DNA of 64,000 bases from Macrostomum lignano (Eukaryota), in the NCBI GenBank assembly GCA_002269645.1, contig NIVC01000660.1, forward strand, positions 124,001-188,000, in the 5' to 3' direction. Shown piece after piece: positions 4,347 to 48,390 of the stretch (position 1 is its first letter; the number at the start of each line of letters is the position of its first letter). The translations under genes were made by a program, and so were the position numbers. The notes beneath the pieces were generated by a model. It was not told the origin of the DNA and did not search any database. It saw only the letters and a program-made list of their open reading frames with translations.

Positions 4347-4425
<79 letters not shown>

Positions 4426-9965: not shown

Positions 9966-10432
9966 CTATACAGAAATGAATGTTTTTAATTACGCAATGA
10001 TTATTTTTTGATGAACTGGTAGCTTTGATTGCAATTTGAATGCTGAACAAAAAATCACAAAAAATGAAACTGGCTTACCCAAAATCAGGGATGCTATAGC
10101 AAACAATACAAATAGTTTCATTTTTAGTTGGTATCGCAAGATACGTTAATGAAAGCTATGTTTGCAATGAATCGAATGAATAGTCAGATATAAACTTACT
10201 TCCATCAGGAGTCTACATGTACAATATATATGGGCTTCTTGTCCCCCACGTGCCCGTCGCTTAATGCCTTTTACGGCCGTTCGCATGTTGCTCGAGGTGA
10301 GACACGTTGAGGCTGCATTCGTGCCAGCTATAATTAGTCTATAGCATATATGACGCAGGATTGCCTGCTCAGATACCAGTATCAGACAGTGGGTAAGACA
10401 CGCACTTTGTCTTCTTTACATGATTTAATGCA

Positions 10433-11160: not shown

Positions 11161-12785
11161 CGAATGCGGTCTTAGGCTTGTGCAGAATTCATACAACGTT
11201 GGCTGAAAAACAGGCCATCTATAACTGTACATGGGGATGTACATGCAACTGGGAGTAATAATTTAACGTATTTGAATATTTTTTCGTCATCAAATTATTT
11301 AAAGCATGATTTTCTTTGGCATGAAGAAGTCAGTTTTACACGAAAAAAACAAATAACAGAAAAAGAAATTCTTTCATAAATGATTTCTTTTTTTTAAGCA
11401 GCAAGTAATTAACTCAGATAAATGTTTTACTATCAATAAATAATAGCTCTTTTACAATTTTTCAATAAATATTACAGATTGTAGCGACTACTTTAACTAG
11501 TAACTAGCTCGATCATTTGCTACTATAAAAATAAAATATTGTTTTAGCTTGCATGTACACCAGAAATCTCACAAGCTTAAACAGCTGAAAAATTCTTTTT
11601 CATCGTCGAATTCGTTAAAATAATAAATTTCGAGCCAGCAGCAAAAGTGAAAAGTCATTGTTCTTAAAAAAATAGAAAAAATGAGACTCCAAAAGTGTGG
11701 TCATCCAGTTGAACTTGGTAGAAAAAAACACACCAGACTTCCAGCAATACAGCCGTAAAATTCAAGCAGGTCTGTAATTAATTACTGACTGTCTTCTGCA
11801 TGACAAAAAGGTCAAATAGAATTTTCCATTGCCCTATGCTTAAACAAACTTTAAAAAGCACTTTTACGAGAGCCAAAGAGCATTCGAAGGAGTCGCTGAA
11901 ATCATAAGCTTTGTGCAAGTATCACAGATACAAAAATAACTAGATGGGCCACTCAGGCAGATATACTTAGTAAAACAGCTTTCTACTTTCAGTTCAGTAG
12001 AAAAGAGGAATACACAAGCTATTGTATAAAAGTAAAGGCAGCTGAAATTACTTTATAAGTTTAGAAGCCCAAGCTAGCAGGCGTAAACAACTTGCTAATT
12101 GGTTCAGCAATAATGTACATTGGCCAGTCTACTGAAATGTACATGGCTGCTTTAGGCTGGAATTCCGAGAAAGGCAATAAAAATTGGGGTGGGGCTGGGG
12201 GGTAGTGTGGGGAGGCGCGGTTGGAGGGTTTAAGGCTGTGGGTAAGAGCCAATTTGCCTTGGCTTTCAAAATACATTAAAAAGCTACAGTTTAACTTACT
12301 ACTGAACTGAAGTAGCTTACACGAAAATGTGCTGAGTGGCCCATATACTTATTCTAGTATCTGTGGCAAGGATAAAAAATAACAATAAACAGAATAAGTA
12401 CAAGTATAAGTCTACCAATAAAGTACAAAAAGGAATAATAAAGTATGCGCGTCTATGTAATTTTGTAGCGAAGAATCCATGCGAAGAACGCATTAGCACA
12501 AGAGCCGCGCACGAGCAGTGGCACACAGACGGGCATAAACGCGTAGATTTTCTAACTTTAAACTTTAAATTTGAAAAACAAAGTTCAAATAAATGGCCCC
12601 AAGTGGAGTGTAAAACTTTAGTTGATAAAGTTAACTGATATAACTTTTCAGCACAAGTCAAAATTGAATTGTTAAGTTATGGTACAAAAACTTTAAGTCG
12701 AAAGTTAACTAATATAAAAAATCAAGTACGACAAAATGTCACGTCAAGGCGCTGGCCGGATGCTGCTGGTGAATACGTACAATAC

Positions 12786-13799: not shown

Positions 13800-15026
13800 T
13801 TAAAAATGTGGCATCTCAGGCGGAGAAGGATTATCGGTAATAACAACGGGCAAAGTTGTCTGCTCAGCCAATACTGGGCGCAAATTATCTCTGACAGGCT
13901 GTCTCTGGGTAGACGAATCCATGGTATCCATAGTACGCCTGTGTACTTGGTCGGAGCTTGGATTTCTAAAAACCCGACCGGAAGGAGCCCTGATGGATGA
14001 TCTGGCGCCGGCTTCGCCATCCGATCTGGAACCCAGATCTTCGTGTAGAGAGCCGCAATCAAAAGACGAGTTACCGGAGCTTCCATTGGCTAAATTGTTA
14101 GAGAATGCTTCACTGCAATGGACTGACACGTTGCTAACAGCAGCACTGGCTCCGTTTGGGCTGGAGCTATTGCTTCTGACTGGTGTAGCGACAGCAGCTT
14201 CCACGACGCTTGAATGTGAAGATGACCCGTGAACTTCACCGGAATCTTCTGGGCTTTCTCGAATTGACGAAGCTCGTTCTAATGGTGGCGTAGGCTCCTG
14301 GTGAACGTCAGCATTGATGGACAAGGTTTGGTGTCCGCTGACAGACGTGGGAACCGATACAAAAGGCTCAACAACTGAAGCTTCGTCATTCATGGACTCG
14401 GAGTCTGAATTACGTACGAGCTCCAAGTCATTATTGGTCGGGACGTTCAAAACCGTAGTTTGATCATTTTCAGCTTGTGACTTTTCTTCTTCGTTGAATT
14501 TCGTATCAGTAAACGGATTAAGAGGAATGCCAGCTTCGTTATCGCTTGTCCTACGTTTCTTCTTAGACTTGAATCTCTTACACAAGGGACAAACAATTAT
14601 GACTACAATAACAATAACAATTCCACAGATCACAGGTATCTGCCACGAAAGACTGCTGTTATTCAATGTAGATGTAACTGTTGTCTGAGATGCAACTGTT
14701 GTCTGAGATGTAACAGTTGGCTGAGGTGTAGATACTGACTGTGACTGCATTTGAACTAATGGAGACCTACGAAAAAATTCTGTGCACCGCATTGAATCAT
14801 TGATTTTCTTGCACTTCGAGTAATCAACTGGTTTTATAGGGTCGCTGCAACGACTCTCGATGGTTGAGCATGGCTCGCAAGTGCAGCCAAGCCCTATGTA
14901 TTGAATAGTAGAGTTGCATACAATTTTGCAGCTTGGATCGATTGCATAGCCAATAACGCTCTTTGTAAAGATTGTTATTATAAAGCAGAGGTAGAAGAAA
15001 ACCCGGATTATTAATTGTAACTTCAT
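13800..15026 (-). CDS. Intronless type I membrane protein (408 aa): signal peptide, 8-Cys ectodomain, Thr/Ser stalk, TM, long Ser-rich cytoplasmic tail; TNFR-like candidate
   Basis: Uninterrupted ATG-to-TAA ORF in non-repetitive sequence. It has a hydrophobic N-terminus, Cys cluster CKIVC...CTCEPC...C...C...C, TM IPVICGIVIVIVVIIVC and a basic stop-transfer segment KRFKSKKKRR. The family is not established. Confidence 0.78.
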   Translation of the reverse strand: MKLQLIIRVFFYLCFIITIFTKSVIGYAIDPSCKIVCNSTIQYIGLGCTCEPCSTIESRCSDPIKPVDYSKCKKINDSMRCTEFFRRSPLVQMQSQSVSTPQPTVTSQTTVASQTTVTSTLNNSSLSWQIPVICGIVIVIVVIIVCPLCKRFKSKKKRRTSDNEAGIPLNPFTDTKFNEEEKSQAENDQTTVLNVPTNNDLELVRNSDSESMNDEASVVEPFVSVPTSVSGHQTLSINADVHQEPTPPLERASSIRESPEDSGEVHGSSSHSSVVEAAVATPVRSNSSSPNGASAAVSNVSVHCSEAFSNNLANGSSGNSSFDCGSLHEDLGSRSDGEAGARSSIRAPSGRVFRNPSSDQVHRRTMDTMDSSTQRQPVRDNLRPVLAEQTTLPVVITDNPSPPEMPHF

Positions 15027-15525
15027 TAGAAAATTCCTTATCAGAAATATAGGAATTAGATGTGTGCTTAATATTTTATCTAAGCAGAAAGTTGATATAG
15101 ATGTACATAACAGAGTCTACAGAGGCACTAGCAAAATAATTTAACCTAGAAACTGGACTTTGTTATATCTATATGCATCTATAGAACTTCTATAGTATTG
15201 AAATGTTAATTTTTTATTATAAGATCAATCACAATTATGCCAAGAAAAATATTCCTTGCTTTGGAATTTTATAAATAGACATTTTTAATATTTGGTAATT
15301 ATTGAATCAGTTTAGTGAATAAAGAACAATACAAAATGCAATGGCTTTATACTCCTAGCCATAAGGTTAAATGGCTATAGTTCTAAATAACTATAGGCAA
15401 ATAATATAGCTTAAAAGATAGGGTCATAGTTGATATTACAGAGAAATTAGATTATACTAAATAAATACTTAAAAGTAACAAAATTTAATAGCTTGTATAA
15501 ATGTTTGATTAAAAAAATACAAACC

Positions 15526-18039: not shown

Positions 18040-18159
18040 GTGCGATGCACAATAATGGCGAGCGCAAATATCTCGCTTGCCTTATTCAAACACTGCCTTC
18101 CGATGCAAATTAAATCATTGTTGACGCTGGCCCGGCGGGGCTGCTGGCCTAGCTGGGTG
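18040..18159 (+). mobile_element. Gypsy LTR-retrotransposon pol remnant, left piece (start of RNase H: IIVDAGPAGL)
   Basis: The translation IIVDAGPAG-L joins GALLSQ at 27061+ to rebuild the DASxxGLGAVLxQ RNase H motif. Confidence 0.75.
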
Positions 18160-21100
18160 ACTACTAAGCAACGGCAGATGGCTTGATTTTGGAGGTGAGG
18201 TGGGTGTCAACCCTCCTCGCCTCTCATTGGCTGGCGCCCCGATCACTAGGTGATCGATACCCGTATCGATATCGGCGACTCGAACCCGCGACCCTCCCCA
18301 GCCGCAGGCGCACCTACCGATATTAGATCCCAATAAATCAATCAGATCCCAAATCAATCAGATCCCAAATCAATCAGATCCCAAGCGCACCCTCCCGAGC
18401 CGCAGGCGCACCCTCCCGAGCCGTAGGCGCCCATGCCGCAGACGCCCATGCCGCAGGCACCCCGAGTGTACACTCTACCGAGCCGCAGGCACCCCGAGTG
18501 TACACTCTCCCGAGCCGCAGGCACCCCGAGTGTACACTCTCCCCAGTACGGGTGTACACTCTCCCCAGTACACTCTCCCGATATGTAGTCAACGATACGT
18601 ACCCCGCAGGCACCCTATACCTCACGCCCTGCCCCCACCTAGCCTCTTCCCCTCTCTCACCCACATCTCAACTAGCGAAATCGAACCCAGGTCGCGCCCA
18701 TACTAGGCCACTACACGGTTTGGGGGTATAGGGAGCAAGAAGTTTCTACCCTAACGCTGACGCAGCCCTGTACAGAGAGGCATGTACGGGCAGAGAGGGG
18801 TGGGTGGACAGAGAGACGGCCACTAGGTTATTATACTGTTGAAGCATAGGGAGCGAGAAGTTTTAACCCCGATGCTGACGCAGCCCTGTACAGTGAGCGT
18901 GTACGGGCAGAGGGTGGGTGGAAAGAGATGTGAATAACACAGCCTGCTGCAGGAGCCGGATAGAGAGGCGCATGCTAGGACAGAGAGACAGTGTGAGTCA
19001 CACAAACCCCCACAGAGAGAGCCGTACAGAGGATAGAGAGCTCCCTCCCCAGTTGCAGGGGACAGAGAGGCAGGCAGGGTATGCAGGGGCACGCGAACAG
19101 TCAAGGGGCCACGCGAGGATAGAGTGGAGGAGCAGAGATGTGTATGGACAGAGAGCCGGCCACGCGTGCGTAGTGTGAGGGAACAGAAACATATGGAGCA
19201 GGAGGGAGATAGGAAGCAAACGCGCAGGGTAAAGGAGCCACACAGGGCGGTACAGTGAGACACGGGCAGGGGTGGAGCCGTGCGTGGACAGAGCTGAACG
19301 GCACGGTCGGCTGCAGGAATAGGATGATAGAGAGGCGCGGAGAGGAGGGGACAGAGAGCAGTGTGCAGGGGTAGGCAGCCACGCTGGCAGGGGAACAGAG
19401 GCGCGTGTAGCCAGTTGCAGCCCGGGACAGAGAAGTGTGAAGGGGGCCTGGGACAGAGTTCCGAGCAAGGCACAGAGAGAGGTAGGGTCCGGTAGCTATG
19501 TATAGACAGGGACCCACGCGAGGGCAGGACAGGGGAGTAGACATGCAAGTTGCATGCAAGGCCAGAGAGGTGTGCGCGGAGGGAGACAGAGAGCAGTGTG
19601 TAGGGGTAGGTAACAGCAAACTTTAGTAGAGGTGCGTGCGGGGACGGAGAAACCAGTCTGAGCGTACAGAGCACATGTGTAGGGACAGAGACGTGAGGGA
19701 GAATCGACCAAAACACGCTATGTATTTTCAAAAGTTGGTTTTAGTGCAACATATTTAATAGTGGGTAGTATAATAGTATGTACATAGTAGGTATAATAGT
19801 AGTAATAATGGTAAGTATATTAGCCCAAAAGGTAGGCTAAAACAGGCTAAACTGTGTGTACGCATCCTCATCACCCCACAAGCCCCCTCTCCCGCCAGAC
19901 TCACTCTTCCATACCCTCCTGTATTGCTGTATGAAGGAAAATATAGTGTAAAAATACAGATCTTAACCGTCAGACCGCTGAAATCAGGGCACACTAGAGG
20001 GGTTTCGGGGTCTGCATGCTCTATGTAAGCTGTTTCAATTATGTTTTGAAAAAACTAGGGGCTTAAATACAACGTTTTATTCAAAAAGTAGGTTATTTTA
20101 ATGAAATAGCTGACACAATCATTGTCGAGAGTAGAAATTTTTATAAGAAACCAGGCATTTTAGCAAAAATAAACCTTCAAACCACATAAAATTGAATAAA
20201 AAGCAGACATTTTCAATTATAAACCGCAAGTATTTTAATAGAAAAGTAAGCAAACAAGGCACAAAACCAGCAAATTTTACCTTTTTATTTTAATGTTACT
20301 GATAAGGTAGAGAGTAGAAACTTGTGAGCTGTACGGAGTTAGAAAGTATTAACCATTATGTATCGTATGAATTATTAGTTCAGTACCAGCCATTGGTCAA
20401 GCGAGCATTTATGAAGTTATTACGAGTGATGAAGGGATAGAGAGCTATATACAGGAAGACAGTATCCTTCTAAACCACCACGAACAGATTGCTAATAGAG
20501 ATAAGCTTTGTCTGTGTGCAGTATGAGTAAGCGAAGGCGGGGCAAATACTTTTCCACATACCGGACAGAACAGTATTGTGCTAGGATTTCTCTCGAAATC
20601 ACGGTACGTTACTAGTTTTTATCACACCATCCAGATGCGTCAACTAGTCAGCAGTAGTCATTTATATGTTATTAGAACTTACAAACCCAGGTCAAGTAAA
20701 TATTACAAAGAGTATATTACGTACACACGCCAACTCCGAATACCAAGCCATACTAGTCTACTTGCAGTGCTCCTGGAGGGAAGGGACGGCGGGGTGTACA
20801 CCCGGCAGGGTGGGCGTCCAGCGAGTGTACATCTGACAGGATGGGTGTTCAGCAAGTGTACATCTGACAGGGTGGGCGTTCAGCAAGTGTACCTTCAGCG
20901 TCGAGTAGGTGTACACCCGTCAGTGGGGAACTCCACCCCTCCCACCAATGTCGTGTGCATGCGGTTAGTCAGTATAGTGGTGGGGTAGACGGTGCAGGAA
21001 GGAAACCCAGATGCTGACGCTGCCCTGTACAGCGAGCAACCAGCCCCCCTGTAGCAGGAGGGGGACAGAGAGTGCGTGGAGGCAGTAGGAGATAGAGGAC

Positions 21101-24100
21101 GCTACCCGGCATGTCGCAGCACGCGGCGCGGGACAGAGGCAGTGTGTAAGTCACCCCCGCGGAGAGAGCTCCCCTGGCAGGAGGCGCGGGACAGAGAGGC
21201 GGTGAATCACACCCCACGGAGAGAGCCGTACAACGAGCTTCCCCACCCGAGTCCGGTAAATATTACAGAGTATTACGTGCACACACCAGCCCTGAATACC
21301 AAGCCATACTAGTCTATCTGCAGTGCTCCCAGAGGGAAGGGATGGTCAGGAGTTACACACCAAGAATGCATTCATACAAAGAGTACACAACTCGAGCCCA
21401 GACACCAAGTCACAGTCTACTTACAGTAGAGATGGTAGATTAATAGCAAGATTATATTACAATTAGACCTCTCTAGCACATGAGGAGTGAAATTCAATAA
21501 TAATTGAATTCAATAATAATACAACATTTAGACGTAGTAATTTAATTACAAAATACCACTAACACTGAGCCAACGAATTGTAGGTTACAAAGGAGTTGCC
21601 ACTCATATGGAAAGCCAGTATAATGCAGGTGTGTATTATTAAAACATAGACAAAAACGATGCAGACGTATATACACACTATTGATTTTGTACATGTACAT
21701 TTCGGCATATTACCACACATCGCGGGCACATATTATATATCGGGGGATAGGTTAAAATACACACATCGTAGATGTAGAAGCAGACACAATGCAGGAAAAT
21801 TATGATACGAGTGTACATATTAGTGCGTAAAAGTATCATATTATGACACCCTGTAGCACATATTGACATAATGCAGGGGAAAATATTGACAGAAATAGTA
21901 CACAATTGTAGAGGTAACAACCAGCCAACTAGTAAGGGCATCCAGCACTTGTTCAGGTTTTTTTTATTTCGAGACGAGTGTCATGCCCCCGCAAGAGATC
22001 TTATCAGAAATTTGTTGAACTCCACTGCAACTCTCCCAGAGCCTCCAAATGGGAGTTTTAACACTTGAGGGGATCCCGCTCAATGTACAGTGCGGACGGA
22101 GAGGGGTAACAGAAAGCGCTGCATCAGACCGCGGAGCTGCATTCCTCCCCCGAGGTAGGCGCGTCAGCTCCCACTCCTCATTTAACCATCAAGTAAACTA
22201 AAGAAGTCAAGCAGAAAGCCTTACAATCACCCGCAACCAGCACAAGTAAGAGTACTTTCCACTAGAGAGCCATAGTGCAAGATTCGCGAGCCAAGTTGAA
22301 GAAGCACACCAAATTACACTAAAGACATATGTATTAAAAAGCATACCGGCACCTCTACAAAAACACAGTATGTACCGATTAAAGTTGCTTTTGGTGCAGT
22401 GTATTTAATAAAAAGCAGGTACCTAACACAAAAGTAGGCATCAATGCAGTGCACGGGCTAAACTGTATTTACAAACGCAGGGCAACGAACTACACACAAT
22501 GTAGCGCATAGACATAATTGTACACATAAATGTACGCAATCTCCGGTATATAGGACCAAATGTACGCAAATGTACACAATGCACACAAACACACACACAC
22601 TCAGGCGCATCCTGCAGCGCATCCTGCAGCACCGATCGCCGCAGGCGATGGCGCCATCGGCAGGAAGCTCTTGCTGTGAATACGCCTGAGTGTGTGTGTG
22701 TTTGTGTACATTGTGTACATTTGCGTACATTTGGTCCTATATACCGGAAATTGCGTACATTTATGTGTACAATTATGTCTATGCGCTACATTGTGTGTAG
22801 TTCGTTGCCCTGCGTTTGTAAATACAGTTTAGCCCGTGCACTGCATTGATGCCTACTTTTGTGTTAGGTACCTGCTTTTTATTAAATACACTGCACCAAA
22901 AGCAACTTTAATCGGTACATACTGTGTTTTTGTAGAGGTGCCGGTATGCTTTTTAATACATATGTCTTTAGTGTAATTTGGTGTGCTTCTTCAACTTGGC
23001 TCGCGAATCTTGCACTATGGCTCTCTAGTGGAAAGTACTCTTACTTGTGCTGGTTGCGGGTGATTGTAAGGCTTTCTGCTTGACTTCTTTAGTTTACTTG
23101 ATGGTTAAATGAGGAGTGGGAGCTGACGCGCCTACCTCGGGGGAGGAATGCAGCTCCGCGGTCTGATGCAGCGCTTTCTGTTACCCCTCTCCGTCCGCAC
23201 TGTACATTGAGCGGGATCCCCTCAAGTGTTAAAACTCCCATTTGGAGGCTCTGGGGAGAGTTGCAGTGGAGTTCAACAAATTTCTGATAAGATCTCTTGC
23301 GGGGGCATGACACTCGTCTCGAAATAAAAAAAAACCTGAACAAGTGCTGGATGCCCTTACTAGTTGGCTGGTTGTTACCTCTACAATTGTGTACTATTTC
23401 TGTCAATATTTTCCCCTGCATTATGTCAATATGTGCTACAGGGTGTCATAATATGATACTTTTACGCACTAATATGTACACTCGTATCATAATTTTCCTG
23501 CATTGTGTCTGCTTCTACATCTACGATGTGTGTATTTTAACCTATCCCCCGATATATAATATGTGCCCGCGATGTGTGGTAATATGCCGAAATGTACATG
23601 TACAAAATCAATAGTGTGTATATACGTCTGCATCGTTTTTGTCTATGTTTTAATAATACACACCTGCATTATACTGGCTTTCCATATGAGTGGCAACTCC
23701 TTTGTAACCTACAATTCGTTGGCTCAGTGTTAGTGGTATTTTGTAATTAAATTACTACGTCTAAATGTTGTATTATTATTGAATTCAATTATTATTGAAT
23801 TTCACTCCTCATGTGCTAGAGAGGTCTAATTGTAATATAATCTTGCTATTAATCTACCATCTCTACTGTAAGTAGACTGTGACTTGGTGTCTGGGCTCGA
23901 GTTGTGTACTCTTTGTATGAATGCATTCTTGGTGTGTAACTCCTGACCATCCCTTCCCTCTGGGAGCACTGCAGATAGACTAGTATGGCTTGGTATTCAG
24001 GGCTGGTGTGTGCACGTAATACTCTGTAATATTTACCGGACTCGGGTGGGGAAGCTCGTTGTACGGCTCTCTCCGTGGGGTGTGATTCACCGCCTCTCTG

Positions 24101-27060
24101 TCCCGCGCCTCCTGCCAGGGGAGCTCTCTCCGCGGGGGTGACTTACACACTGCCTCTGTCCCGCGCCGCGTGCTGCGACATGCCGGGTAGCGTCCTCTAT
24201 CTCCTACTGCCTCCACGCACTCTCTGTCCCCCTCCTGCTACAGGGGGCTGGTTGCTCGCTGTACAGGGCAGCGTCAGCATCTGGGTTTCCTTCCTGCACC
24301 GTCTACCCCACCACTATACTGACTAACCGCATGCACACGACATTGGTGGGAGGGGTGGAGTTCCCCACTGACGGGTGTACACCTACTCGACGCTGAAGGT
24401 ACACTTGCTGAACGCCCACCCTGTCAGATGTACACTTGCTGAACACCCATCCTGTCAGATGTACACTCGCTGGACGCCCACCCTGCCGGGTGTACACCCC
24501 GCCGTCCCTTCCCTCCAGGAGCACTGCAAGTAGACTAGTATGGCTTGGTATTCGGAGTTGGCGTGTGTACGTAATATACTCTTTGTAATATTTACTTGAC
24601 CTGGGTTTGTAAGTTCTAATAACATATAAATGACTACTGCTGACTAGTTGACGCATCTGGATGGTGTGATAAAAACTAGTAACGTACCGTGATTTCGAGA
24701 GAAATCCTAGCACAATACTGTTCTGTCCGGCATGTGGAAAAGTATTTGCCCCGCCTTCGCTTACTCATACTGCACACAGACAAAGCTTATCTCTATTAGC
24801 AATCTGTTCGTGGTGGTTTAGAAGGATACTGTCTTCCTGTATATAGCTCTCTATCCCTTCATCACTCGTAATAACTTCATAAATGCTCGCTTGACCAATG
24901 GCTGGTACTGAACTAATAATTCATACGATACATAATGGTTAATACTTTCTAACTCCGTACAGCTCACAAGTTTCTACTCTCTACCTTATCAGTAACATTA
25001 AAATAAAAAGGTAAAATTTGCTGGTTTTGTGCCTTGTTTGCTTACTTTTCTATTAAAATACTTGCGGTTTATAATTGAAAATGTCTGCTTTTTATTCAAT
25101 TTTATGTGGTTTGAAGGTTTATTTTTGCTAAAATGCCTGGTTTCTTATAAAAATTTCTACTCTCGACAATGATTGTGTCAGCTATTTCATTAAAATAACC
25201 TACTTTTTGAATAAAACGTTGTATTTAAGCCCCTAGTTTTTTCAAAACATAATTGAAACAGCTTACATAGAGCATGCAGACCCCGAAACCCCTCTAGTGT
25301 GCCCTGATTTCAGCGGTCTGACGGTTAAGATCTGTATTTTTACACTATATTTTCCTTCATACAGCAATACAGGAGGGTATGGAAGAGTGAGTCTGGCGGG
25401 AGAGGGGGCTTGTGGGGTGATGAGGATGCGTACACACAGTTTAGCCTGTTTTAGCCTACCTTTTGGGCTAATATACTTACTATTATTACTACCATTATAC
25501 CTACTATGTACATACTATTATACTACCCGCTATTAAATATGCTGCACTAAAACCAACTTTTGAAAATACATAGCGTGTTTTGGTCTATTCTCCCTCACGT
25601 CTCTGTCCCTACACGTGCTCTGCCCGCTTTGGTCTCTGTTTGTGTACCTCTCTGTAACGTCTCTGTACGCTCAGACTGGTTTCTCCGTCCCCGCACGCGC
25701 CTCTACTAAAGTTTGCTGTTACCTACCCCTACACACTGCTCTCTGTCTCCCTCCGCGCACACCTCACTGCCCTTGCATGTAATTTGCATGCCTTGCATGC
25801 CCTGTCCTGCCCTCGCGTGGGTCCCTGCCTATACATAGCTACCGGACCCTACCTCTCTCTGTGCCTTGCTCGCAACTCTGTCCCAGGCCCCCCTTCATAC
25901 TTCTCTGTCCCAGGCCCCCCTTCATACTTCTCTGTCCCGGGCTGTAACTGGCTGACACGCGCCTCTCTGTTCCCCAGCCTGCGTGGCTGCCTACCCTGCA
26001 CACTGCTCTCTGTCCCCCTCCGCGCCTCTCTATCATCCTATTCCTGCAGCTGACCGTGCCGTTCAGCTCTGTCCACGCACGGCTCCACCCCTGCCCGTGT
26101 CTCACTGTACACTGCTCCCTGCTGCATGGCTCCCTTACCCTGCGCGTTTGCTTCCTATCTCCCTCCTGCTCCATATGTTTCTGTTCCCTCACACTACGCA
26201 CACGTGGCTGGCTCTCTGTCCAAACACATCTCTGCTCCTCCACTCTATCCTCGCGTGGCCCCTTGACGGTTCGCATGCCCCTGCATACCCTGCCTGCCTC
26301 TCTGTCCCCTGCAACTGGGGAGGGAGCTCTCTATCCTCTGTATGGCTTTCTCTGTGGGGTGTGTGTGACTCACACTACCTCTCTGTCCTAGCATGCGCCT
26401 CTCTATCCGGCTCCTGCAGCAGGCTGTGTTATTCACATCTCTTTCCACCCACCCTCTGCCCGTACACGCTCAGTGTACAGGGCTGCGTCAGCATCGGGGT
26501 TAAAACTTCTCGCTCCCTATGCTTCAACAGTATAACAACCTAGTGGCTGGTTCTCTGTCCGCCCCACCCCTCTCTGCCCGTACACTCTCACTGTACAGGG
26601 CTGCGTCAGCGTTAGGGTTGAAACTTCTCGCTCCCTATACCCCACAACCGTGTAGTGTCCTAGTATGGGCGCGACCTGGGTTCGATTTCGCTAGTTGAGA
26701 TGTAGGTGAGAGAGGGGAAGAGGCCCGTATCGATGACTACATATCGGTGTACACACATATCGGGAGAGTGTACACTCGGGGTGCCTGCGGCATGGGCGCC
26801 TGCTGCATGGGCGCCTGCGGCTCGGGAGGGTGCGCTTGGGATCTGATTGATTTGGGATCTGATTGATTTGGGATCTGATTGATTTATTGGGATCTAATAT
26901 CGGTAGGTGCGCCTGCGGCTGGGGAGGGTCGCGGGTTCGAGTCGCCGATATCGATACGGGTATCGATCACCTAGTGATCGGGGCGCCAGCCAATGAGAGG
27001 CGAGGAGGGTTGACACCCACCTCACCTCCAAAATCAAGCCATCTGCCGTTGCTTAGTAGT
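18160..27060. mobile_element. 8.9-kb palindromic (fold-back) insertion with 6-bp TSD; candidate non-autonomous Polinton/Maverick-like element
   Basis: Arms 18160-22607 and 22683-27060 are reverse complements (mirror ORFs 20578..20988+/24303..24713-, 21678..21941-/23297..23614+). Termini are ACTACTAAGC...GCTTAGTAGT and the TSD is TGGGTG (18154-18159, 27061-27066). No recognisable protein. The structure is certain; the superfamily is inferred. Confidence 0.9.
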
Positions 27061-28500
27061 TGGGTGCACTTCTATCGCAGACGCAATTTGGGCGGGAACC
27101 AGGCTAGCCCATCGCATACGCTAGTCGGACACTGTCAAATATCGAGCAACGCTATTCATAAACAAAGTTACAGAGAAATTAAAGATGCATTGGCTGTGAA
27201 GTTCGGCTGTCTAAGTTTCAATTCTATCTCCACAGCGCGCCGATATTCACGGTGCAAACGGACAACAAGCCACTGGTTGCTCTGTTCGGCAGCATGGTTC
27301 GAGACCTTTCCCAAGAATCGAAGGGATGGCATTGCGCATTTAGCATCTGAAATTCACAGTTGAGTACCAGCCGGGCCCGCTCAACCTGGCAGACGTGCCT
27401 AGCTGGCAGCCCCTGCCGACACCCGCCCGAATGTGGGCAAAGAGCTGGATGCCCTTTCCATCGCCGCTGTTGTGCAGGCGGCCGTACGTCCAAATGTGCT
27501 GTCGATCGCCAGCTTACAGGAGAGATCGCGAAAGGACACACCAATTCAAGCGGCGATTCGCGCCTTGGAGACAGGGCGTTGGAGTCTGGAGTCAGCAGAA
27601 CGGCGGTCGCTGCATGCGCTGCGTCAGGAACTGTGCAGTGGGCGGGGTGCTCCTACGGGACCAGCGAATCGTCGTCCCGGTGGCGCTCCGACGGCTGGTA
27701 CTGGATCTAGCGCAACGGCCGGCACCAGTGCGTACGCAAGACGCTGGGACCGGCTGAACACCAAGGTCTGGAACTTTTCAAATAAAGATGGAGCGCTTCG
27801 TAGCCGTGTGCCAGGCCTGACTGGCCGCTGAATCCGACGCCTATCCCGAATGCGGCATGGCTGACGCTCGGTGCGGATCTGCTCGGACCCATTCAAGGCA
27901 GCATACTGCTAGTCTGCGTCGATCAATACTTCCGATTTTCCGAGGTGAAGGTCAAACGTTAGTCACTGACAATGGTCCACCGCGTTCGCTTCAGCCCAGT
28001 TTAAGAGCTACGGAATCCGTCAGCTCCTCATCATGAATCGTTCCATTAAGAAGGTGGTGCGCTCTGCAATTGCACAGAAGCGCGACTGGAGAGCGGCCAT
28101 TGACGAGTTGCTGCTGTCCTTTCGATGCACGCCTTAGCGAACAACTGGACCGGTGGTCAAATCATGGACCGGCAGCTTCCGCGCAGCGCGAAGCAGCTCG
28201 AAAGACGCAATGCGAACGGATTTAGACAGACCAGAAGCGACTGGCGAGATCGCACAAGCTCAAGGTTTGCGACACTGAATCCGCTCAAGGAAGACACGCC
28301 GTTCGAGTGGGACCCCTGGCTTATCGATGAGGAGATCAAGGCGGACTCGGTGACGATACGACAGGGTGACAGAGTTTGGCGGCCAGCTGAACTAAGTTCT
28401 GCGTGGCGCATTGCTCGAACAGTTGCCGATCTCTCAGGTTGTGATCAGTCAACAATTTGCTCAGGATGCTCGCAGGTGGGAAAACACGACGAGAAAAGCA
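27061..28500 (+). mobile_element. Degenerate Gypsy pol: RNase H and integrase remnants
   Basis: Frameshifted motifs GALLSQ, PIAYASRTLSNIEQRY, ALAVKFGC, FTVQTDNKPLV, RIVVPVALRRLVLDLA, LGADLLGPIQGSILLVCVDQYFRFSEV, VTDNGP and NRSIKK. Confidence 0.9.
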
Positions 28501-28509
28501 GATTGAGGG

Positions 28510-30900
28510 ATTCCTCGGCGGTTCTGGAATAGTTGCCATCCAAATGAAGGAGGGAGTTGCACTGGGCGAAGTTTGTCGTGTCTGAGGGACTTCACCAGCC
28601 GGGCTGTGGGATGCTGGCCCTCCAAACCAGCGCAGAAAGCCTTCCAGGTGTCCTTTTTGGCCTTCCGGATACAGCTCTTGTAGGTTCTCAAACCTGAGTG
28701 GTAGATCTCCCAGTCTTCTGGGGTGTTATTCTGGTTGGCCATCCGATGCAGCCGACGGGAGGTCTTTTTCAAACGGGTGAGATCTTTATTCCACCAAAGT
28801 GAGTACTTCTTCCTACTGACAATAAGAGGGGCGTTTTTCACCGTGGCCGCATTTAGCAGCTCGACAAGCTTGTTGCAACGGGCTTCAATGCTCGGGATTG
28901 CTTCGCAACCGTTCAGGTCTTCGGCCGGTTCGCTGCTGATCAGAGACTCAAGGTCCCTTCTGAAGCCAGCCCAGTCCGCTCTTTTTAAATTGGGACGGTT
29001 CGCCTTGGTGACGCGAGCGCCGCCAGCTGTGACACTGAAATGGATATAGAAATGGTCCGAGAGCGAGGGGGATGTCGTCCAAAGGACTACTCAAGTTGTC
29101 CTTGATGTCGTCTCTGACCATCCAATTTTGAATCCGGTTAAGGATGTTACTGGACGCAAGGGTGAGATCAATGACCTCTTTCCTGCTAACGTTCGCAAAG
29201 GTGGGTTTGCGCCCTTTAGTTGCAAATGTGCAGATTCGAGGTGTTAATGAAGTTAATAAGCATACTACCACTGAGGTTAGTGTTACGGCTAGCCCACACA
29301 GTGTTGTGAGCATTCGCATCGCAGCCAATAATGAGGTTTTTGTTCTCGATGTTACAGAAATTGGCGAGATCCTGCAGGAGGGGTGACGGAAGTTCATTCT
29401 GAATATCCATGTACACGGACGAGAAGATCATCCCGTTCACGGTGAAGGTACAAATGTCTTTATTGCAAAACATCGGCATGAGCATGGCTGGGAGCTTGCG
29501 CTTGACCAGGGCAATGGCTCTAGGGGTTTCACGTCTAGAGAGGGAGAGGATCTGGTAGCCTTTCGGCAGCAGGGTGGGCTTACCCTCACGGTGTAGGGCT
29601 GCTGAATGAGGTAGATGTCCACACCGGTGCCACCAAGGGTGTCGGTCAGGCTGCTGGAGGCTGCGACCGGGTGGCGCAGGTTGATCTGCACAATATGCAG
29701 GTTAGGATCACTGTTTTGCGTGAGCGTGGTAATATCATAATTGGGCCCACCCGGAGGGTTGGCCCTCAGACGGTCACGCCTCATCATAGATGATCTGGGC
29801 ATGGCGGTGGTGCGCTTCCTCCTCGGGATGAGGTGGAAGATTATCTTCCATGCACCAACGTAGGCGGCGTGGTCGTTACCTTGCATGTAGCGCTCCCAGT
29901 CGGCAGAGAGGCCCATGTAGAGGGTTTTTCCGTTGCCATCTTTGGCCGGCACCTCCTTGAAAGCCCGGAGGCCGTCCGCAGGCAACTCGGGTGCTTGGCG
30001 ACAAGACGACCGCGGATCTCCTCGATCGTCCTAGCCCCTGAATAGAAGGCCCTGTACCTCTTACAGGGAGGCGGAGGGCGAGCCTTCTCAACGACCAGCT
30101 CCGGGAGCTGTGCCTTGGAAGTACCCCAGTCGATGCTGGGCAGGTTAGCTAAGGCGGTGTTCGAATGTTCTTCGCTCTTAAAGGCGAGAATGAGATTGCT
30201 ATTGGCGTATCTAACAGACTCGACCTCAACACCGATATGGTCGTTATCCCAGAGGAAGTCGTCAGCATGGGCGACGGCGCCTTCCATCTGGGCATCGCTC
30301 AGTGTCCCACTGGCCGCGCGGACACAGATTTTATGGAGGGGTAGCAACCGCGGGGTTCACGGAGAGCTGCGGGAGTTGCCGGCTCCCTAGCCGGAAAAGA
30401 TTTTTGCTCAGAATCCATAGAGAATAGCTGAAACGGGGAAGAAACACAAATTAGAAAAGGCAGACCTACCGCTCAGGGACTGGATATACACCCAGTCAGC
30501 CAGAGGCTACCCCCTGCCACGGCGAACAGCAGGAAGGCTTTGGGTTACCGTCTTAGCCCAGGATTGCTCCCAGGCGACCAGGCGAGGCTCCGGCAGGCCC
30601 CCGTTTCACACTCCACAAGATCAGGGGGCGGGAGGCCGGCTACGGGCTTGGCACACAAACGCCAGGTCGGGTTGACAGCCGACGCCCGAGCCTTCCCCCG
30701 CAGGTGCGGCCCTCGAGAACCCATGCGGTACCAGTTGCAACTATGGGCTGTCGATGGGTAGTTAGCGCTTAGCCAGCAGCCAACTACTTAGCAGCCACCT
30801 GCCCTGCAAAAAGGCAGCAGGGGGGATCCGTCCTCCACCAGCAGACCAAAACGAAGAAGCTGGACGCTTCCACGCCAAGCCAGAGCGAAAGAGGAGGGGG
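28510..30900 (-). mobile_element. Non-LTR retrotransposon 5' half (R1/LOA-like): 5' UTR, ORF1, APE endonuclease, linker; RT absent
   Basis: Motifs IVQINLRH...[23 protein letters not shown]...RKEVIDLTLAS, SDHFYI and WWNKDL...[17 protein letters not shown], with several frameshifts. Boundaries are approximate. Confidence 0.85.
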
Positions 30901-31243: not shown

Positions 31244-32100
31244 TTAAGCGATGTCTTCAAGAAGAGAAACTTGGGTTCCCAAATGAAACGATATAGGTGT
31301 AAAGTTGCTCGCTTGGCAAGTAAGATGAATAGGAAGGCAAAAATCAACATTTAATGAATTTAATTGAACGACTCGTTTCGCACGATACTGTGCATCTTCA
31401 GGTTTATTTTTGAGCGAAAGAAACGAGCGAGATCGGCAGTAAATAAATACAAAATTTTGGGGTGTAAATTCAATCCATATTTGAAGTACATGTTTGTTGG
31501 TCCAAAAGTCGAGAGGCAAAGTGCAGGCCCGGAATGATAGCGATATAGTTAGAAGTATATAATGTACATCTAGTGTCCCCTCCCTCAGAACACACGGAGA
31601 ACATGTCCCGCGCCACTGTGTCGGAGTTGAGTGTTGAGGTTGGGGGAATGCGCTTTAATGTACAGCGCTTCAAGTATCTGGAGTTTGGAGTCAAATGAGC
31701 ATTGATCAATGTCTTTGAAGCGCTCTTCGGGTTTGCAGTTGGAGCAACTATTACACTCTAAGAGATGGTTTTGGATAGCCGACGGTTTCAGCCAGTGCTC
31801 CCTGATTCTAGTGTGCAGGTGCCTTTTTGTCTTCCCCACGTAGGAGACGCTCTGGTCATCAGAGCAGTTGAACTGATAAACGACACGAGTACGAAGAGCA
31901 CAGGGAACACGTGACTTCAACCGACCGACAAAGTTGCCAACCTTAGCAGAACGAAAGATGACACGGATGTTGCAATTAAGCGAGTTGCGGAACAATTTGC
32001 AGATTTTATTTTTGAAAAGTTAAGAAGGATAGCCAAAGAAAGGGAGGACAAGAGTTGGTTCGTTGAGATCGATGGGATCAGCTTTAAGGCTTTTGGGTGA
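31244..32100 (-). mobile_element. Penelope-like element 3' end: GIY-YIG endonuclease (31585-31995) plus 3' UTR/pLTR
   Basis: VVYQFNC...YVGKTKRHLHTRIREH...ILEALYIK..PNLN, preceded by LVLPFFG with one stop. Truncated on the 5' side at ~32100. Confidence 0.9.
31362..31409 (-). ncRNA. Minimal type I hammerhead ribozyme in the Penelope 3' region
   Basis: Minus strand reads aac-CUGAAGA-u-gcac(aguauc)gugc-GAAAC-ga-GUC-guu. The core is intact, stem II is 4 bp, stem III is minimal and stem I is aac/guu. Predicted cut between 31370 and 31369. Confidence 0.78.
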
Positions 32101-32124
32101 TTTTAAGTGGGAGACCAACAATTG

Positions 32125-32695
32125 ACCTCTGCAACTTGACCGCCGCAATTTGACCGCCGCAATTTGACCGTCGCAATTTGACCGCCGCAATTTGACCGCC
32201 GCAATTTGACCGTCGCAATTTGACCGCCGCAATTTGACCGTCGCAATTTGACCGCCACAATTTGACCGTCGCAATTTGACCGCCGCAATTTGACCGTCGC
32301 AATTTGACCGCCGCAATTTGACCGCCGCAATTTGACCGTCGCAATTTGACCGTCGCAATTTGACCGTCGCAATTTGACCGTCGCAATTTGACCGCCGCAA
32401 TTTGACCGCCGCAATTTGACCGCCGCAATTTGACCGCCACAATTAGACCGCCGCAATTTGACCGCCGCAATTAGACCGCCGCAATTTGACCGCCACAATT
32501 TGACCGCCGCAATTTGACCGCCACAATTAGACCGCCGCAATTTGACCGCCGCAATTAGACCGCCGCAATTTGACCGCCACAATTTGACCGCCGCAATTTG
32601 ACCGCCGCAATTTGACCGCCGCAATTTGACCGCCGCAATTTGACCGCCGCAATTTGACCGCCGCAATTTGACCGCCGCAATTTGACCGCCGCAAT
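32125..32695. repeat. 14-bp minisatellite (aatttgaccgccgc), with 2-3 inverted copies at ~33862-33890
   Basis: Direct observation. Confidence 0.95.
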
Positions 32696-34686
32696 TGCCG
32701 GCAATTTGGTGTTGAGCACCAGTAACGGAAATGAATGAAAACGGAACGGAATGAACATAACGGAATGAATGAAAAATTTCATTTCCGTTAACGGACGGCC
32801 GTTAAGATTTTCACTAACGGATTAACGAATATGCGTGAATAATTTCGTAAGTTAATGACAAATTTATCGTTAACGTTTAAGACAATGTCAAGTGTGAAAC
32901 CAAAAAGTAAAAAAGAACGAGAAAAAAACATATATAAATATACTATAGATTACAAATAAGAAATAACTTGTACATAATAAGGAGCGAGAGCAAGAAGTTA
33001 AATATATACAATTTAACGGATATACAAATTTAATTTATAACAGTCGTGAAAGTTTGTATTATTTTTTCTTAGGTTTTGAAAAAGAATTAAACATCGTTTT
33101 TATTTATTTTATACGCATTCTTCTCTCATGGTGCCTATTGGGATGTATTCTCACTGTCTATAGTGTGGGTCTAGCGGTTTGGGTTCTTCAGCTCTTTCTT
33201 CGATCTATTAGGCAGTCAGAGAAAACCGTATAAACTGATGGGATCTCCTATAGTATCTAGGCTGCATTTGAATCGCACGAATATTTCGCTTTGCGTAGCT
33301 TTCAAGACAAATGATTGATTTTAAGACTTAGATTTGAGCCAACTTGATAATCCAGAGACCAGCACAAATAGAGCGGGTTAGGATCTGAACTCGCGCAAAA
33401 GAAGAGCGCCGCTCCAGTTTGAGATGGGCGTCTATTTTATACCGATTGGAATTTTTAACCCTCTTCCCCCGCCGCCGGTGGGACGTCTTTGCGTGGTTAG
33501 CAACGGAGAGCGGTTGTAAGCAATAAAAATCTGGGACTCAGTCCCCAGCTAGTTGTACACGAGTTTACTTAGTTCTAGTAGGTTGCTAAGTGTGTGGGTT
33601 AGAGATTATTCGGGTTTTGCTAATCTATGTGTTGAGTTGGATAAATTTTGGGATAGAAAGCTGATTATAGAAAAAGAGCTTCGTTTTCCTTCTCTTAACT
33701 TTGTCCATGGATGATTAAACAGTCCTCTCTCTCTCTCTCTCGGTTGTCGAGCTACTTGGGGTTGATCTCGCCTTCTTGGGCAGCTCCAGCTAGGTTGAAT
33801 AGGAGTCCGTGGGCGGGCCCGTCTGATTCCTCCTCCAAAGTTCGTCAGGTTGAGGCGTTGAGGCGGTCAAATTGCGGCGGTCGAATTGTCGGCGACGAAA
33901 TGTCAGTGAGAGACTTTGCGAAAGTACATGTAAGACTAGCTAACTAGGTTACGAGCGTACGTATGTTTTGTTGCACTTCTGCACATCTGCAGACTGCTTG
34001 GTTCTAAGTCGTACCACTATGGCAATACAACTTGAAGATAAAGTATTTGTGAACAGGATCGTAGAGGCGCACTTTTTTATTCCCATAATGCTTTAGCTCG
34101 CGAGAGATCAGCAACATTGTCTAGCAATTTGACGATCATAATTCACACTTTTAATGCAGAACAATCCATTACTACAAGCAATACATTATCCGTAGGATCG
34201 CCAAACAGAAAAACAATTAATGCAAAGAATCAGCGGTCGCAGCACGTGACAACGATTTGTCTATGGCTCGCGCCGGTATCCCCCACTTGCTCCGGGCAAA
34301 ACGTCTATGGTCTCAGTGTAAATTTCATTTATTTGCATCAGTGCAAATAAACGGTTTATTTCACTCGCCCATAGACAAATTAAAACGCTGCTTCTAACTG
34401 CTCACTTGGCTACATAGAGAGAATTGTCTGAAACAGCAAATTTCACTTTTATTTTCTTCAGCAAATGACCTTCAATCGGCACAACTTGACAATTTTTATG
34501 ACAAGAAAGGGATATTTTCAAACAGCATATCCATTAATATCCAAAACATGCTGGGAAAAGAGCATTCAAGAATCAGGAACTAAACGCTGAATACTTCAAC
34601 AAAAAGCAATCAATTTTGGTACAATAACATTTACAACAAGAATGCAAACTGTTTGCCAGTAAGCAATAATAACCTATTGAATAAGT

Positions 34687-35270
34687 TCATTTCCACATTG
34701 TCCGTTTACTAGCCTGCTTACATCCTGTTTTTACTAATCTTTGCTTGAAAAATGAAATGACAACACGATTCGACTGGCCGCAGGCTTCAATTCTCATCAC
34801 CTTGTCAGGTGGACCAGAAACGGTAGTAACTCCATTTTCACTCGTGCTAGTAGCCTCGCTTGGTTGGCGCACACTTTGGCCACTGAGAACAGCACTTACT
34901 TGTTTTTGCCGATTGACCGATGGTGCAATGTAGCGTTCGAGGGCTTTCGCGCTTGAATGTCCCGTTACTTGGGCGATATCGCCTCGCTCAATCCCAGCTT
35001 CGTGCAACTCAGTCGCGCAAATTTTTCGCAAGCTCTGATTGGTAAATCTACCAGATCCTTCAAGTCGAACGGATGCAACAGCGTCCCGCACTAAAGTCGA
35101 CAGCGTATTTCTACCGATCTGACCAACAGTAAACCAGGATGTAGCGCTTTCCGTTGTCCAATTCTTGTTCGCCGAGAGAAAAAGAGCAGGTTGCACAGTT
35201 TTCTGGACGCAAACTCGCATATTTGCGATAAACGCAAACGATGCATTTTTCACAATCGGCATTCACATTC
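34687..35270 (-). pseudogene. C-terminal third of a second Crypton-type tyrosine recombinase (frameshifted)
   Basis: KCIVCVYRKYASLRPENC, a frameshift at ~35190, then ALFL...RFTNQSLRKICATEL...VTGHSS...LERYI...MRIEACGQSNRVVISFF. It is colinear with the 35652-37018 protein. Confidence 0.8.
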
Positions 35271-48183: not shown

Positions 48184-48390
48184 AGCACTTGGTGTGATTT
48201 ATTCTCCTGATATTAACCCCAAGTGTGGTTTGGTCAGCCTAACAAGATACTCCATTCATTATGCAGAATTTCCCGGCTATTCATAATTACGTAAAAGCAA
48301 GAAGCAGGCAAATTTCATAATGATTTTAAAACACGTTCTGGTTCTGCTAAAATTAGTTCCTTCTGAAACAATATTGAATTCGAACTCCTA

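What the first reader, a model, noticed from the sequence alone, without database searches (positions are those of the whole stretch)
18154..27066. 8.9-kb fully palindromic mobile element with 6-bp TSD and ACTACT/AGTAGT termini
Seen: two ~4.4-kb inverted arms, a 75-bp spacer, termini ACTACT...AGTAGT and an exact TGGGTG duplication. Removing the insert rejoins a Gypsy RNase H motif (VDAGPAG-L / GALLSQ), so this is one clean integration event. Known: a 6-bp TSD, long TIRs and short-repeat termini used for slide-back protein priming characterise Polintons/Mavericks, whose ends usually read AG...CT rather than the AC...GT seen here. Inference: this is a gene-less, entirely fold-back satellite of a Polinton-like virus or transposon, mobilised in trans. 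It may represent an undescribed class of defective or parasitic replicon.
Basis: partly seen in the sequence, partly recalled or inferred. Interest (0 to 1): 0.9.

Follow-up and report, generated by a model that had tools for sequence, protein, structure and literature searches.

The report
Gene-less palindromic transposon in a flatworm
An 8.9-kb non-coding DNA insertion in a Macrostomum flatworm genome is almost a perfect palindrome, and its ends and 6-bp target duplication resemble those of Maverick/Polinton virus-like elements; that link and its mobility in trans remain unproven because no second copy or helper could be found.

Summary
Window 18160-27060 (8,901 bp) starts with ACTACT and ends with AGTAGT. 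It is flanked by an exact TGGGTG duplication and pairs with its own reverse complement along its whole length, apart from a 69-nt asymmetric centre.

It has no detectable coding capacity, tRNA or curated RNA family. The host is a Macrostomum flatworm.

- The 244-bp tips are identical.
- The next ~1.4 kb, built of degenerate short repeats, is only 95.9% identical with 20 indels.
- The inner 2.7 kb is 99.96% identical.

Published vertebrate Mavericks have 6-bp duplications and tandem end motifs that begin with A, such as (AGT)2 at the 5' end. (ACT)2 follows the same design but is not a documented motif. IS3EU/GingerRoot (TA..TA ends) and Dada (no inverted repeats, small-RNA-gene targets) do not fit.

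A Maverick-dependent, non-autonomous fold-back element is therefore the best reading (about 0.45). However, no other copy, helper or empty site was found in any collection I could reach.

Fold-back, gene-less transposons are a known kind, so "undescribed class" is not supported. Interest is moderate.

The parts
18154..18159 (.). Left copy of the 6-bp target-site duplication, TGGGTG
   Evidence: Read directly; identical to 27061-27066.
27061..27066 (.). Right copy of the 6-bp target-site duplication, TGGGTG
   Evidence: Read directly.
18160..27060 (.). The whole element: 8,901 bp, non-coding and almost fully palindromic
   Evidence: Self reverse-complement alignment gives 8,537 matches and 110 mismatches. 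Inverted-repeat blocks were found. There is no other copy in the window.
18160..18165 (+). Terminal motif (ACT)2. Its complement (AGT)2 lies at 27055-27060, so both 5' ends read ACTACT.
   Evidence: It has the same design as the published Maverick end motifs, a short unit repeated in tandem and starting with A (PMC8097293).
18160..18403 (.). Zone A, left tip. It is a perfect 244-bp terminal inverted repeat with 26817-27060. It contains nested short palindromes at 18233-18274 and a 16-bp unit repeated 3.1 times at 18335-18384.
   Evidence: 0 differences in 244 bp. At zone B's rate of change the probability of this is about 1e-6. Short palindromes were found and the tandem repeat.
26817..27060 (.). 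Zone A, right tip, the mirror of 18160-18403. Its 16-bp repeats lie at 26836-26885.
18404..19810 (.). Zone B, left subterminal region. It is G+C-rich (57%) and built of degenerate 14-52-bp repeats and short tandem arrays.
   Evidence: 95.9% identical to 25481-26816, with 51 substitutions and 20 gap events covering 241 bases. The repeat families were found.
25481..26816 (.). Zone B, right subterminal region, a diverged mirror of 18404-19810
19811..22540 (.). Zone C, left inner arm. It is unique, 44% G+C, and has no protein family match.
   Evidence: 99.96% identical to 22750-25480, with 1 substitution and 3 homopolymer one-base indels. Pfam found nothing credible. The largest open frame has only one spurious repeat hit among 1.84 billion representatives.
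22750..25480 (.). Zone C, right inner arm, a near-identical mirror of 19811-22540
22541..22749 (.). Centre. It comprises zone D (22541-22610 / 22680-22749, 3 substitutions in 70 bp, with CA/TG-rich runs) and the asymmetric 69-nt spacer 22611-22679, which holds small hairpins of its own.
   Evidence: The sub-threshold Rfam mir-3149 hit (45 bits against a gathering score of 100) reflects only the hairpin shape.
18054..27347 (+). Degenerate Ty3/gypsy-type pol fragment (RNase H-like part) into which the element is inserted. It is given as one broken gene from first base to last. It carries at least six in-frame stops, one 5' truncation (a CT microsatellite lies upstream) and this insertion. Further frame changes downstream were judged by eye only.
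   Evidence: Pfam RT_RNaseH at E=0.0019 for the piece 27183-27347, below the cut-off. The frames were read. Macrostomum LTR elements are mostly Ty3/Mdg4 (PMC12801592).

Best explanation
This is a genuine, single insertion of a non-autonomous, gene-less fold-back DNA element in a Macrostomum genome.

Shown:
- Exact ends and a 6-bp target duplication.
- Perfect 244-bp tips.
- Whole-length self-complementarity.
- No coding capacity.

Inferred, integration: the element was inserted by an integrase that makes cuts staggered by 6 bp. Its ends, a trinucleotide beginning with A and repeated twice, follow the design of Maverick/Polinton ends. It most likely depends on a Maverick-like helper in two ways. 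The helper's integrase would recognise the tips. If the element is replicated as a linear molecule, the helper's protein-primed polymerase would start on the repeated terminal triplet and jump back.

Inferred, structure: the palindromic build gives two identical origin-bearing ends. It also lets a displaced single strand snap back into a full hairpin. This is the kind of defective derivative that strand switching produces in protein-primed replicons.

Inferred, history: the arms have two ages. An older inverted duplication is now about 4% diverged in a repeat-rich subterminal zone. The inner 2.7 kb was renewed very recently, by arm-to-arm conversion or fold-back repair of a break near the centre. 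That event left the asymmetric 69-nt spacer.
For: - Ends, duplication and palindrome.
- Tips are perfect while the neighbouring zone is 4% diverged (probability about 1e-6), which argues that the tips were under constraint up to the last integration.
- No credible protein family match in 20 arm pieces, no homologues, no tRNA and no curated RNA family.
- Published Maverick features (PMC8097293): 6-bp duplications, inverted repeats of 46-1,447 bp, and end motifs (AGT)2, (AG)3 and (AC)3A that all start with A and are read as jump-back repeats. Roughly 2-kb inverted repeats are reported in butterfly polintons (bioRxiv 10.1101/2025.02.07.637071).
- The other 6-bp families do not fit. IS3EU/GingerRoot ends are TA..TA (PMC10045372). 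Dada has no terminal inverted repeats and targets small RNA genes (PMC3706591).
- The reading phase of the interrupted RNase H-like frame is the same on both sides of the duplication.
Against: - Only one copy is known. There is none elsewhere in the window, in a 29-kb M. lignano locus, in IMG/VR or in JGI metagenomes.
- No Maverick gene remnant lies inside the element or among the window's larger open frames.
- (ACT)2 is not one of the documented Maverick end motifs.
- At 8.9 kb the element is below the 13-25 kb given for Polintons (PMC10748475).
- Imperfect subterminal inverted repeats made of short subrepeats are more typical of cut-and-paste fold-back transposons.
- Protein-primed replication of any Maverick is itself a model, not a demonstration.
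- The near-identity of the inner arms may have arisen at this locus after insertion.
Confidence: 0.45

Rival explanations
1. It is a fold-back, non-autonomous cut-and-paste transposon of another or a not yet described DDE superfamily that happens to make 6-bp duplications. A transposase would bind the perfect tips and the subterminal short repeats. There would be no protein-primed replication and no virus.
For: - The architecture is the classical fold-back one: very long inverted repeats, subterminal arrays of degenerate short repeats whose copy number differs between arms, and no coding capacity.
- The tips are perfect while the subterminal repeats are diverged, as in transposons where only terminal and repeated binding sites are constrained.
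- No Maverick gene is anywhere in sight.
Against: - The families known to me or found in the papers that make 6-bp duplications do not fit: IS3EU/GingerRoot have TA..TA ends and Dada has no inverted repeats.
- From my own knowledge, Drosophila fold-back elements, P/Galileo, hAT and Mutator-like elements make 7-10-bp duplications.
- A terminal triplet repeated exactly twice and starting with A is a Maverick trait.
Confidence: 0.3
2. It is a remnant that collapsed in place. A larger element with ~1.65-kb imperfect inverted repeats, possibly autonomous, inserted here. Later a break inside it was repaired by fold-back synthesis or arm-to-arm conversion, replacing the interior with a mirror copy. 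On this reading the full palindrome never moved and is not a replicon.
For: - The arms have two ages: 155 differences are expected in the inner 2.7 kb at the subterminal rate, and 4 are seen.
- The centre is asymmetric, with a cluster of substitutions next to it.
- Only a single copy is known.
Against: - The subterminal zone consists of slippage-prone repeats, so part of the contrast may reflect mutation rate rather than age.
- The intact duplication and perfect tips fit a young insertion equally well.
- Nothing shows that a larger interior ever existed here.
Confidence: 0.17
3. The centre is an assembly artefact. Fold-back chimeric long reads would have made the assembler join the two inner arms directly, dropping a real central segment that could carry genes.
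For: - Fold-back artefacts in long reads are documented (PMC12870357, title and abstract only).
- The inner arms differ almost only by homopolymer length, as consensus errors would.
Against: - An artefact would mirror one arm completely. Here the outer 1.4 kb of the two arms differs by 4% and many indels, and each arm is joined to its own correct flank with a matching duplication.
- The two 4.4-kb arms in inverted orientation are therefore real. Only the absence of cargo between them could be artefactual.
- The 69-nt spacer and the nearby substitutions look like real sequence.
Confidence: 0.06

Closest known systems
Maverick/Polinton virus-like elements (as surveyed in vertebrates, PMC8097293)
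   Same: Both have a 6-bp target duplication and long terminal inverted repeats. Both have a terminal motif that is a short unit repeated in tandem and begins with 5'-A. The 244-bp tip, or the 1.65-kb tip plus subterminal zone, lies within or near the published 46-1,447-bp range.
   Different: This element has no polymerase, integrase, ATPase, protease or capsid gene. It is 8.9 kb rather than 13-25 kb. Its motif is (ACT)2, not (AGT)2, (AG)3 or (AC)3A. The whole element is a palindrome. No helper with the same ends has been identified.
Fold-back transposons (Drosophila FB, Galileo of the P superfamily and similar)
   Same: Nearly the whole element is inverted repeat. The subterminal parts are arrays of short repeats whose number differs between arms. 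There is no coding capacity, and the element is presumed to be mobilised in trans (Galileo papers listed, titles and abstracts only).
   Different: From my own knowledge those families make 7-9-bp duplications, not 6 bp, and their ends are not tandem triplets. The arms here are 4.4 kb, longer than usual.
Palindromic (snap-back or hairpin) defective genomes of protein-primed replicons, such as defective adenovirus genomes and hairpin derivatives of yeast linear plasmids (own knowledge, not checked with a tool)
   Same: These are a copy of one genome end joined to its own mirror image, so both termini carry the same origin and genes are lost. This is the model for how a palindromic Maverick derivative could arise.
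   Different: Those are extrachromosomal molecules seen in infected or plasmid-bearing cells. This one is integrated with a target duplication. Its arms are not of one age, which a single copy-back event does not predict.
IS3EU / GingerRoot DNA transposons
   Same: They also make a 6-bp target duplication and are present in animals (PMC10045372; PMC6839031 abstract).
   Different: Their termini are TA..TA, occasionally TG..CA. Here they are AC..GT with a tandem triplet.

Membership tests
Maverick/Polinton | 6-bp target-site duplication | tested here: met
   An exact TGGGTG lies on both sides. The published feature is in PMC8097293.
Maverick/Polinton | Terminal inverted repeats of about 50-1,500 bp | tested here: met
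   The tips are perfect over 244 bp, and the inverted repeat continues through the whole element.
Maverick/Polinton | Conserved end motif: a 2-3-nt unit repeated in tandem at the very ends [(AGT)2, (AG)3, (AC)3A] | tested here: inconclusive
   The ends read (ACT)2//(AGT)2. This is the same design and the same first base A, but the motif is not among those documented.
Maverick/Polinton | Encodes a protein-primed family B polymerase and an rve integrase, plus ATPase, protease and capsid proteins | tested here: not met
   None of the 20 arm pieces matches any Maverick gene family in Pfam, and no homologues were found. The element can at most be a non-autonomous derivative, not a member in the strict sense.
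Maverick/Polinton | For a non-autonomous derivative: the same termini as an autonomous element in the same genome | not testable with these tools
   The source genome cannot be searched as DNA here. The collections I could reach gave nothing.
Fold-back transposons (structural class) | Long inverted repeats that make up most of the element, built in part of short tandem subrepeats, with little or no unique centre and no coding capacity | tested here: met
Fold-back transposons (Drosophila FB / Mutator-related) | 9-bp target duplication (own knowledge) | tested here: not met
   The duplication is 6 bp.
IS3EU / GingerRoot | 6-bp duplication together with TA..TA (rarely TG..CA) termini | tested here: not met
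   The duplication length fits, but the termini are AC..GT (criteria from PMC10045372).
Dada | No terminal inverted repeats; insertion into snRNA or tRNA genes with 6-7-bp duplications | tested here: not met
   The element is all inverted repeat and sits in a retrotransposon fragment (criteria from PMC3706591).
hAT | 8-bp duplication and the characteristic short terminal consensus (own knowledge) | tested here: not met
   The duplication is 6 bp, and I see no likeness between the ACTACT termini and the hAT terminal consensus as I recall it. Rare hAT groups with shorter duplications are known to me only from memory.

The most novel reading that the evidence does not exclude
The element is a true satellite replicon of a flatworm Maverick-like virus. 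On this reading it is a gene-less, palindromic, defective-interfering-type genome. It would be replicated by the helper's protein-primed polymerase from two identical (ACT)2 origins, integrated by the helper's integrase, and possibly packaged. That would make it the animal counterpart of the small parasitic DNAs that accompany virophages and giant viruses. The (ACT)2 end would then mark a Maverick lineage with a new terminal motif.
Probability: 0.2. Interest if true: 0.75.

Novelty: new variant of a known kind. Interest (0 to 1): 0.45.

Why it matters
Mavericks/Polintons are thought to be viruses that also live as transposons, yet non-autonomous dependants of them are hardly described and their replication mode is still a model. 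A gene-less element that keeps only the Maverick-type ends would mark the minimal cis-acting sequences those elements need. These appear to be the tandem triplet, a 244-bp perfect tip and the subterminal repeats.

The two-age palindrome is also a compact natural example of how long palindromes persist in an animal genome, through renewal of the inner arms and an asymmetric centre.

If the element instead belongs to an ordinary cut-and-paste family, it is one more fold-back transposon in a repeat-rich flatworm genome and of local interest only.

Tried and rejected
Searches for other copies
- blastn of one arm against the rest of the window gave 0 hits.
- The terminal 22-mer with up to 3 mismatches matched only the two ends in the window and nothing in the M. 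lignano locus L017.
- Three patterns against IMG/VR gave 0 hits.
- In JGI metagenomes the terminal 20-mer gave 0 hits. A gapped subterminal-repeat pattern gave 16 loci, none similar to the element beyond the seed.

Coding capacity
- Pfam on 20 arm pieces found nothing credible; the only matches were three zinc-finger families at E>=0.017, below their cut-offs, on one piece.
- The 305-aa piece had no hit among 5.8 billion proteins.
- The 153-aa inner piece had one hit among 1.84 billion representatives (P0241). This is a repeat protein that shares a six-residue motif in each repeat and is spurious.
- An exact look-up of ten window open frames, four of them in the element, found none in the collection.

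RNA
- No tRNA was found.
- Rfam gave only a sub-threshold miRNA-hairpin match at the centre, rejected as a shape effect.

Empty site
- The only related genomic locus I could fetch (L017) is collinear with the window from 37282 onward. It differs entirely in the region that would hold the insertion site, so no empty-site comparison was possible.

Flank
- PDB sequence searches with two flank pieces gave nothing relevant.
- The integrase-like reading downstream of the RNase H-like stretch is by eye only. Pfam did not support it.

Literature
- The founding Polinton paper (PMC1450207) is not held.

Rejected readings
- Dada and IS3EU/GingerRoot, on the criteria given in the membership test.
- A uniform ageing of a once-perfect palindrome, given the zone contrast.
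- A full assembly artefact, because the outer arms differ and each joins its own flank.
Full report
1. The observation

The sequence reads TGGGTG followed by ACTACTAAGC at 18154-18169, and GCTTAGTAGT followed by TGGGTG at 27051-27066. The element is therefore 18160-27060 (8,901 bp), flanked by an exact 6-bp direct duplication. The bases just outside the ends are not complementary, so the inverted repeat ends exactly at ACTACT/AGTAGT and the duplication is exactly six bases.

The terminal 22-mer occurs only at the two ends of the window, against 0 expected. Aligned to its own reverse complement, the element gives 8,537 matches and 110 mismatches. The arms meet at an asymmetric 69-nt spacer, 22611-22679, which folds into small hairpins of its own.

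The arms fall into four zones.
- Zone A, the tips (18160-18403 / 26817-27060), is identical over 244 bp.
- Zone B (18404-19810 / 25481-26816) is 95.9% identical, with 51 substitutions and 20 gap events covering 241 bases.
- Zone C (19811-22540 / 22750-25480) has one substitution and three one-base homopolymer indels in 2,729 bp.
- Zone D, next to the centre, has 3 substitutions in 70 bp.

At zone B's rate, zero differences in the tips has a probability of about 1e-6. At the same rate about 155 differences would be expected in zone C, where four are seen.

Zone B is G+C-rich and made of degenerate 14-52-bp repeats and short tandem arrays whose copy number differs between the arms. Part of its divergence may therefore be slippage. 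However, the elevated substitution density continues about 140 bp beyond the last large arm-to-arm indel (about 19670), into a stretch of lower G+C. A real historical boundary is therefore likely.

3. Content

Twenty stop-to-stop pieces of one arm gave no credible Pfam match. The longest, 305 aa, is low-complexity and has no homologue among 5.8 billion proteins. The longest inner piece has only a spurious repeat hit among 1.84 billion representatives. There is no tRNA. The only Rfam hit is a sub-threshold hairpin match at the centre.

The tips carry nested short palindromes (18233-18274) and a 16-bp unit repeated three times. These are plausible protein-binding sites, but that is inference.

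4. Context and host

Joined as they stand, the predicted exons of the window's TM9SF gene (40713-44817) are 95% identical to a Macrostomum lignano protein. The encoding locus (L017, GCA_002269645.1) is collinear with window 37282-60844 at 88-96.6% nucleotide identity.

Published divergence between M. lignano subgenomes is about 2% (PMC10733133). The window is therefore from Macrostomum, perhaps a sibling species or a more diverged paralogous block.

Upstream of 37282 the two sequences are unrelated apart from one 79% stretch, so no unoccupied site could be compared.

Around the element lie:
- a non-LTR endonuclease fragment;
- a GIY-YIG open frame;
- galaxin-like cysteine-rich frames;
- Crypton-like tyrosine-recombinase frames;
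- many 17-24-bp minisatellites.

No Maverick gene was seen among the window's larger open frames.

5. The insertion site

The right flank, in the phase set by the duplicated hexamer, reads an RNase H-like stretch. A 55-aa piece of it matches Pfam RT_RNaseH at E=0.0019, below the curated cut-off. The left flank holds only about 35 codons of it, preceded by a CT microsatellite.

The fragment is broken by at least six in-frame stops, a 5' truncation and this insertion. The pieces abutting the insertion are too short for any tool. What the sequence shows is that the hexamer sits in the same codon phase on both sides. The claim of a clean insertion into a gypsy-type RNase H is therefore plausible but only partly verified.

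6. Which integration machinery

Among eukaryotic DNA elements, 6-bp duplications are reported for three groups:
- Polinton/Maverick;
- IS3EU/GingerRoot, whose termini are TA..TA (PMC10045372);
- Dada, which has no terminal inverted repeats and targets small RNA genes (PMC3706591).

The last two do not fit.

The survey of vertebrate Mavericks reports perfect 6-bp duplications, inverted repeats of 46-1,447 bp, and conserved end motifs (AGT)2//(ACT)2, (AG)3//(CT)3 and, in one fish, (AC)3A//T(GT)3. It interprets these as the repeats needed for jump-back in protein-primed replication (PMC8097293). All of them start with 5'-A.

The present (ACT)2//(AGT)2 has the same design and the same first base but is not a documented motif. 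This is the main positive argument for a Maverick affiliation, and it is a resemblance, not a membership. The defining genes are absent, and the required test, the same tips on an autonomous element, could not be run.

7. Most likely mechanism

Shown:
- a single integration with a 6-bp stagger;
- tips kept perfect;
- no genes.

Inferred:
- The element depends on a helper's integrase, and if it is copied as a linear molecule, on a helper's protein-primed polymerase starting on the terminal triplet repeat.
- The palindromic build gives two identical ends and allows a displaced strand to snap back. From my own knowledge, such palindromic defective genomes are known for adenoviruses and for yeast linear plasmids. 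I did not check this with a tool.
- The two-age pattern is best explained by an older inverted duplication whose inner 2.7 kb was later renewed, by conversion between the arms or by fold-back repair of a break near the centre.
- The asymmetric spacer and the nearby substitutions would be the footprint of that event.

Whether the renewal happened before the last transposition or at this locus cannot be told from one copy.

8. Rivals

- A cut-and-paste fold-back transposon of another superfamily (0.3). It fits the architecture, including the subterminal subrepeats, but no known 6-bp family fits the ends.
- Collapse in place of a once larger element (0.17). It fits the two ages and the single copy.
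- An assembly artefact at the centre (0.06). It cannot explain why the outer 1.4 kb of the two arms differ and why each joins its own flank. At most a central cargo has been dropped.

9. Novelty and score

Gene-less fold-back transposons are a known kind, and Maverick ends and duplications are known. What may be new is the combination: a fully palindromic, non-coding element with Maverick-type ends, and an (ACT)2 end variant, in a flatworm.

I rate it a new variant of a known kind with interest 0.45. The strongest reading, a satellite replicon of a Maverick-like virus, has a probability of about 0.2.

- the first bases of an animal virus's terminal repeat;
- a short retrotransposon RNase H motif;
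- terminal sequences and terminal consensus motifs of several transposon families.

I also read seven codons across the duplicated hexamer in my head to check the phase. None of these strings went into a tool call, a script or a conclusion, and none is repeated here. No closed-up, repaired or consensus sequence was built or saved.

Noticed in passing
window 37282-60844; L017 9075-28946: The window comes from a Macrostomum flatworm. It is collinear with M. lignano contig NIVC01000023.1 at 88-96.6% identity, which is more diverged than the ~2% published for M. lignano subgenomes. It may therefore be a sibling species or an older paralogous block.
   Followed up: partly
window 2099-3635, 4418-4637, 6014-6981, 7468-9926, 10426-11171, 52976-56452, 57522-59550: The window has an unusual density of long minisatellites with 17-24-bp units, up to 149 copies. 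Several show strong strand skew, and several create long spurious open frames. The arrays at 52976-56452 and 57522-59550 are also present, with different lengths, in the M. lignano locus.
   Followed up: partly
window 44276-44446; L017 16036-16985: A 21-bp minisatellite lies inside the TM9SF gene, between its last two coding pieces. It has about 8 units in the window and about 45 in the M. lignano locus.
   Followed up: no
window 34690-35262 and 35655-36851 (- strand): Two open frames carry DUF3504 and a phage-integrase-type tyrosine recombinase domain. They are Crypton-like elements or genes derived from them, and the longer one is uninterrupted over 399 codons.
   Followed up: no
window 31588-32019 and 32023-32801 (- strand): A GIY-YIG nuclease open frame (E=1e-5) lies directly next to cysteine-rich frames that match galaxin-like repeats. 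This could be a Penelope-like or other GIY-YIG element, or an odd host gene.
   Followed up: no
window 28951-29701 (- strand): A fragment of a non-LTR retrotransposon endonuclease (Exo_endo_phos_2, E=8e-10) lies split over two frames, 1.9 kb to the right of the element.
   Followed up: no
window 48394-49134 and 47033-48238 (- strand): There is a forkhead-domain open frame whose only close relative (96%) is a protein known from a metagenome-derived set. It is followed by a repetitive cysteine-rich frame with zf-C2HCIx2C and vanabin-like matches.
   Followed up: no
window 13803-15116 (- strand): A 408-aa single-exon open frame has a signal-peptide-like start, a cysteine-rich part, one hydrophobic segment and a serine-rich tail. 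It lies 3 kb to the left of the element and matches no family.
   Followed up: no
L017 2243-4564 (- strand): At the place where the window holds the gypsy fragment and the element, the M. lignano locus carries a 773-aa gene with Transposase_21/DUF4218 domains (CACTA-type). This shows rapid turnover of mobile elements in this interval.
   Followed up: no
window 18233-18274 (mirror in 26946-26987): The perfect tip contains a cluster of nested short palindromes (7-8-nt arms, 2-3 nt apart), about 75-115 bp from the end. This looks like a binding site for a dimeric protein.
   Followed up: partly
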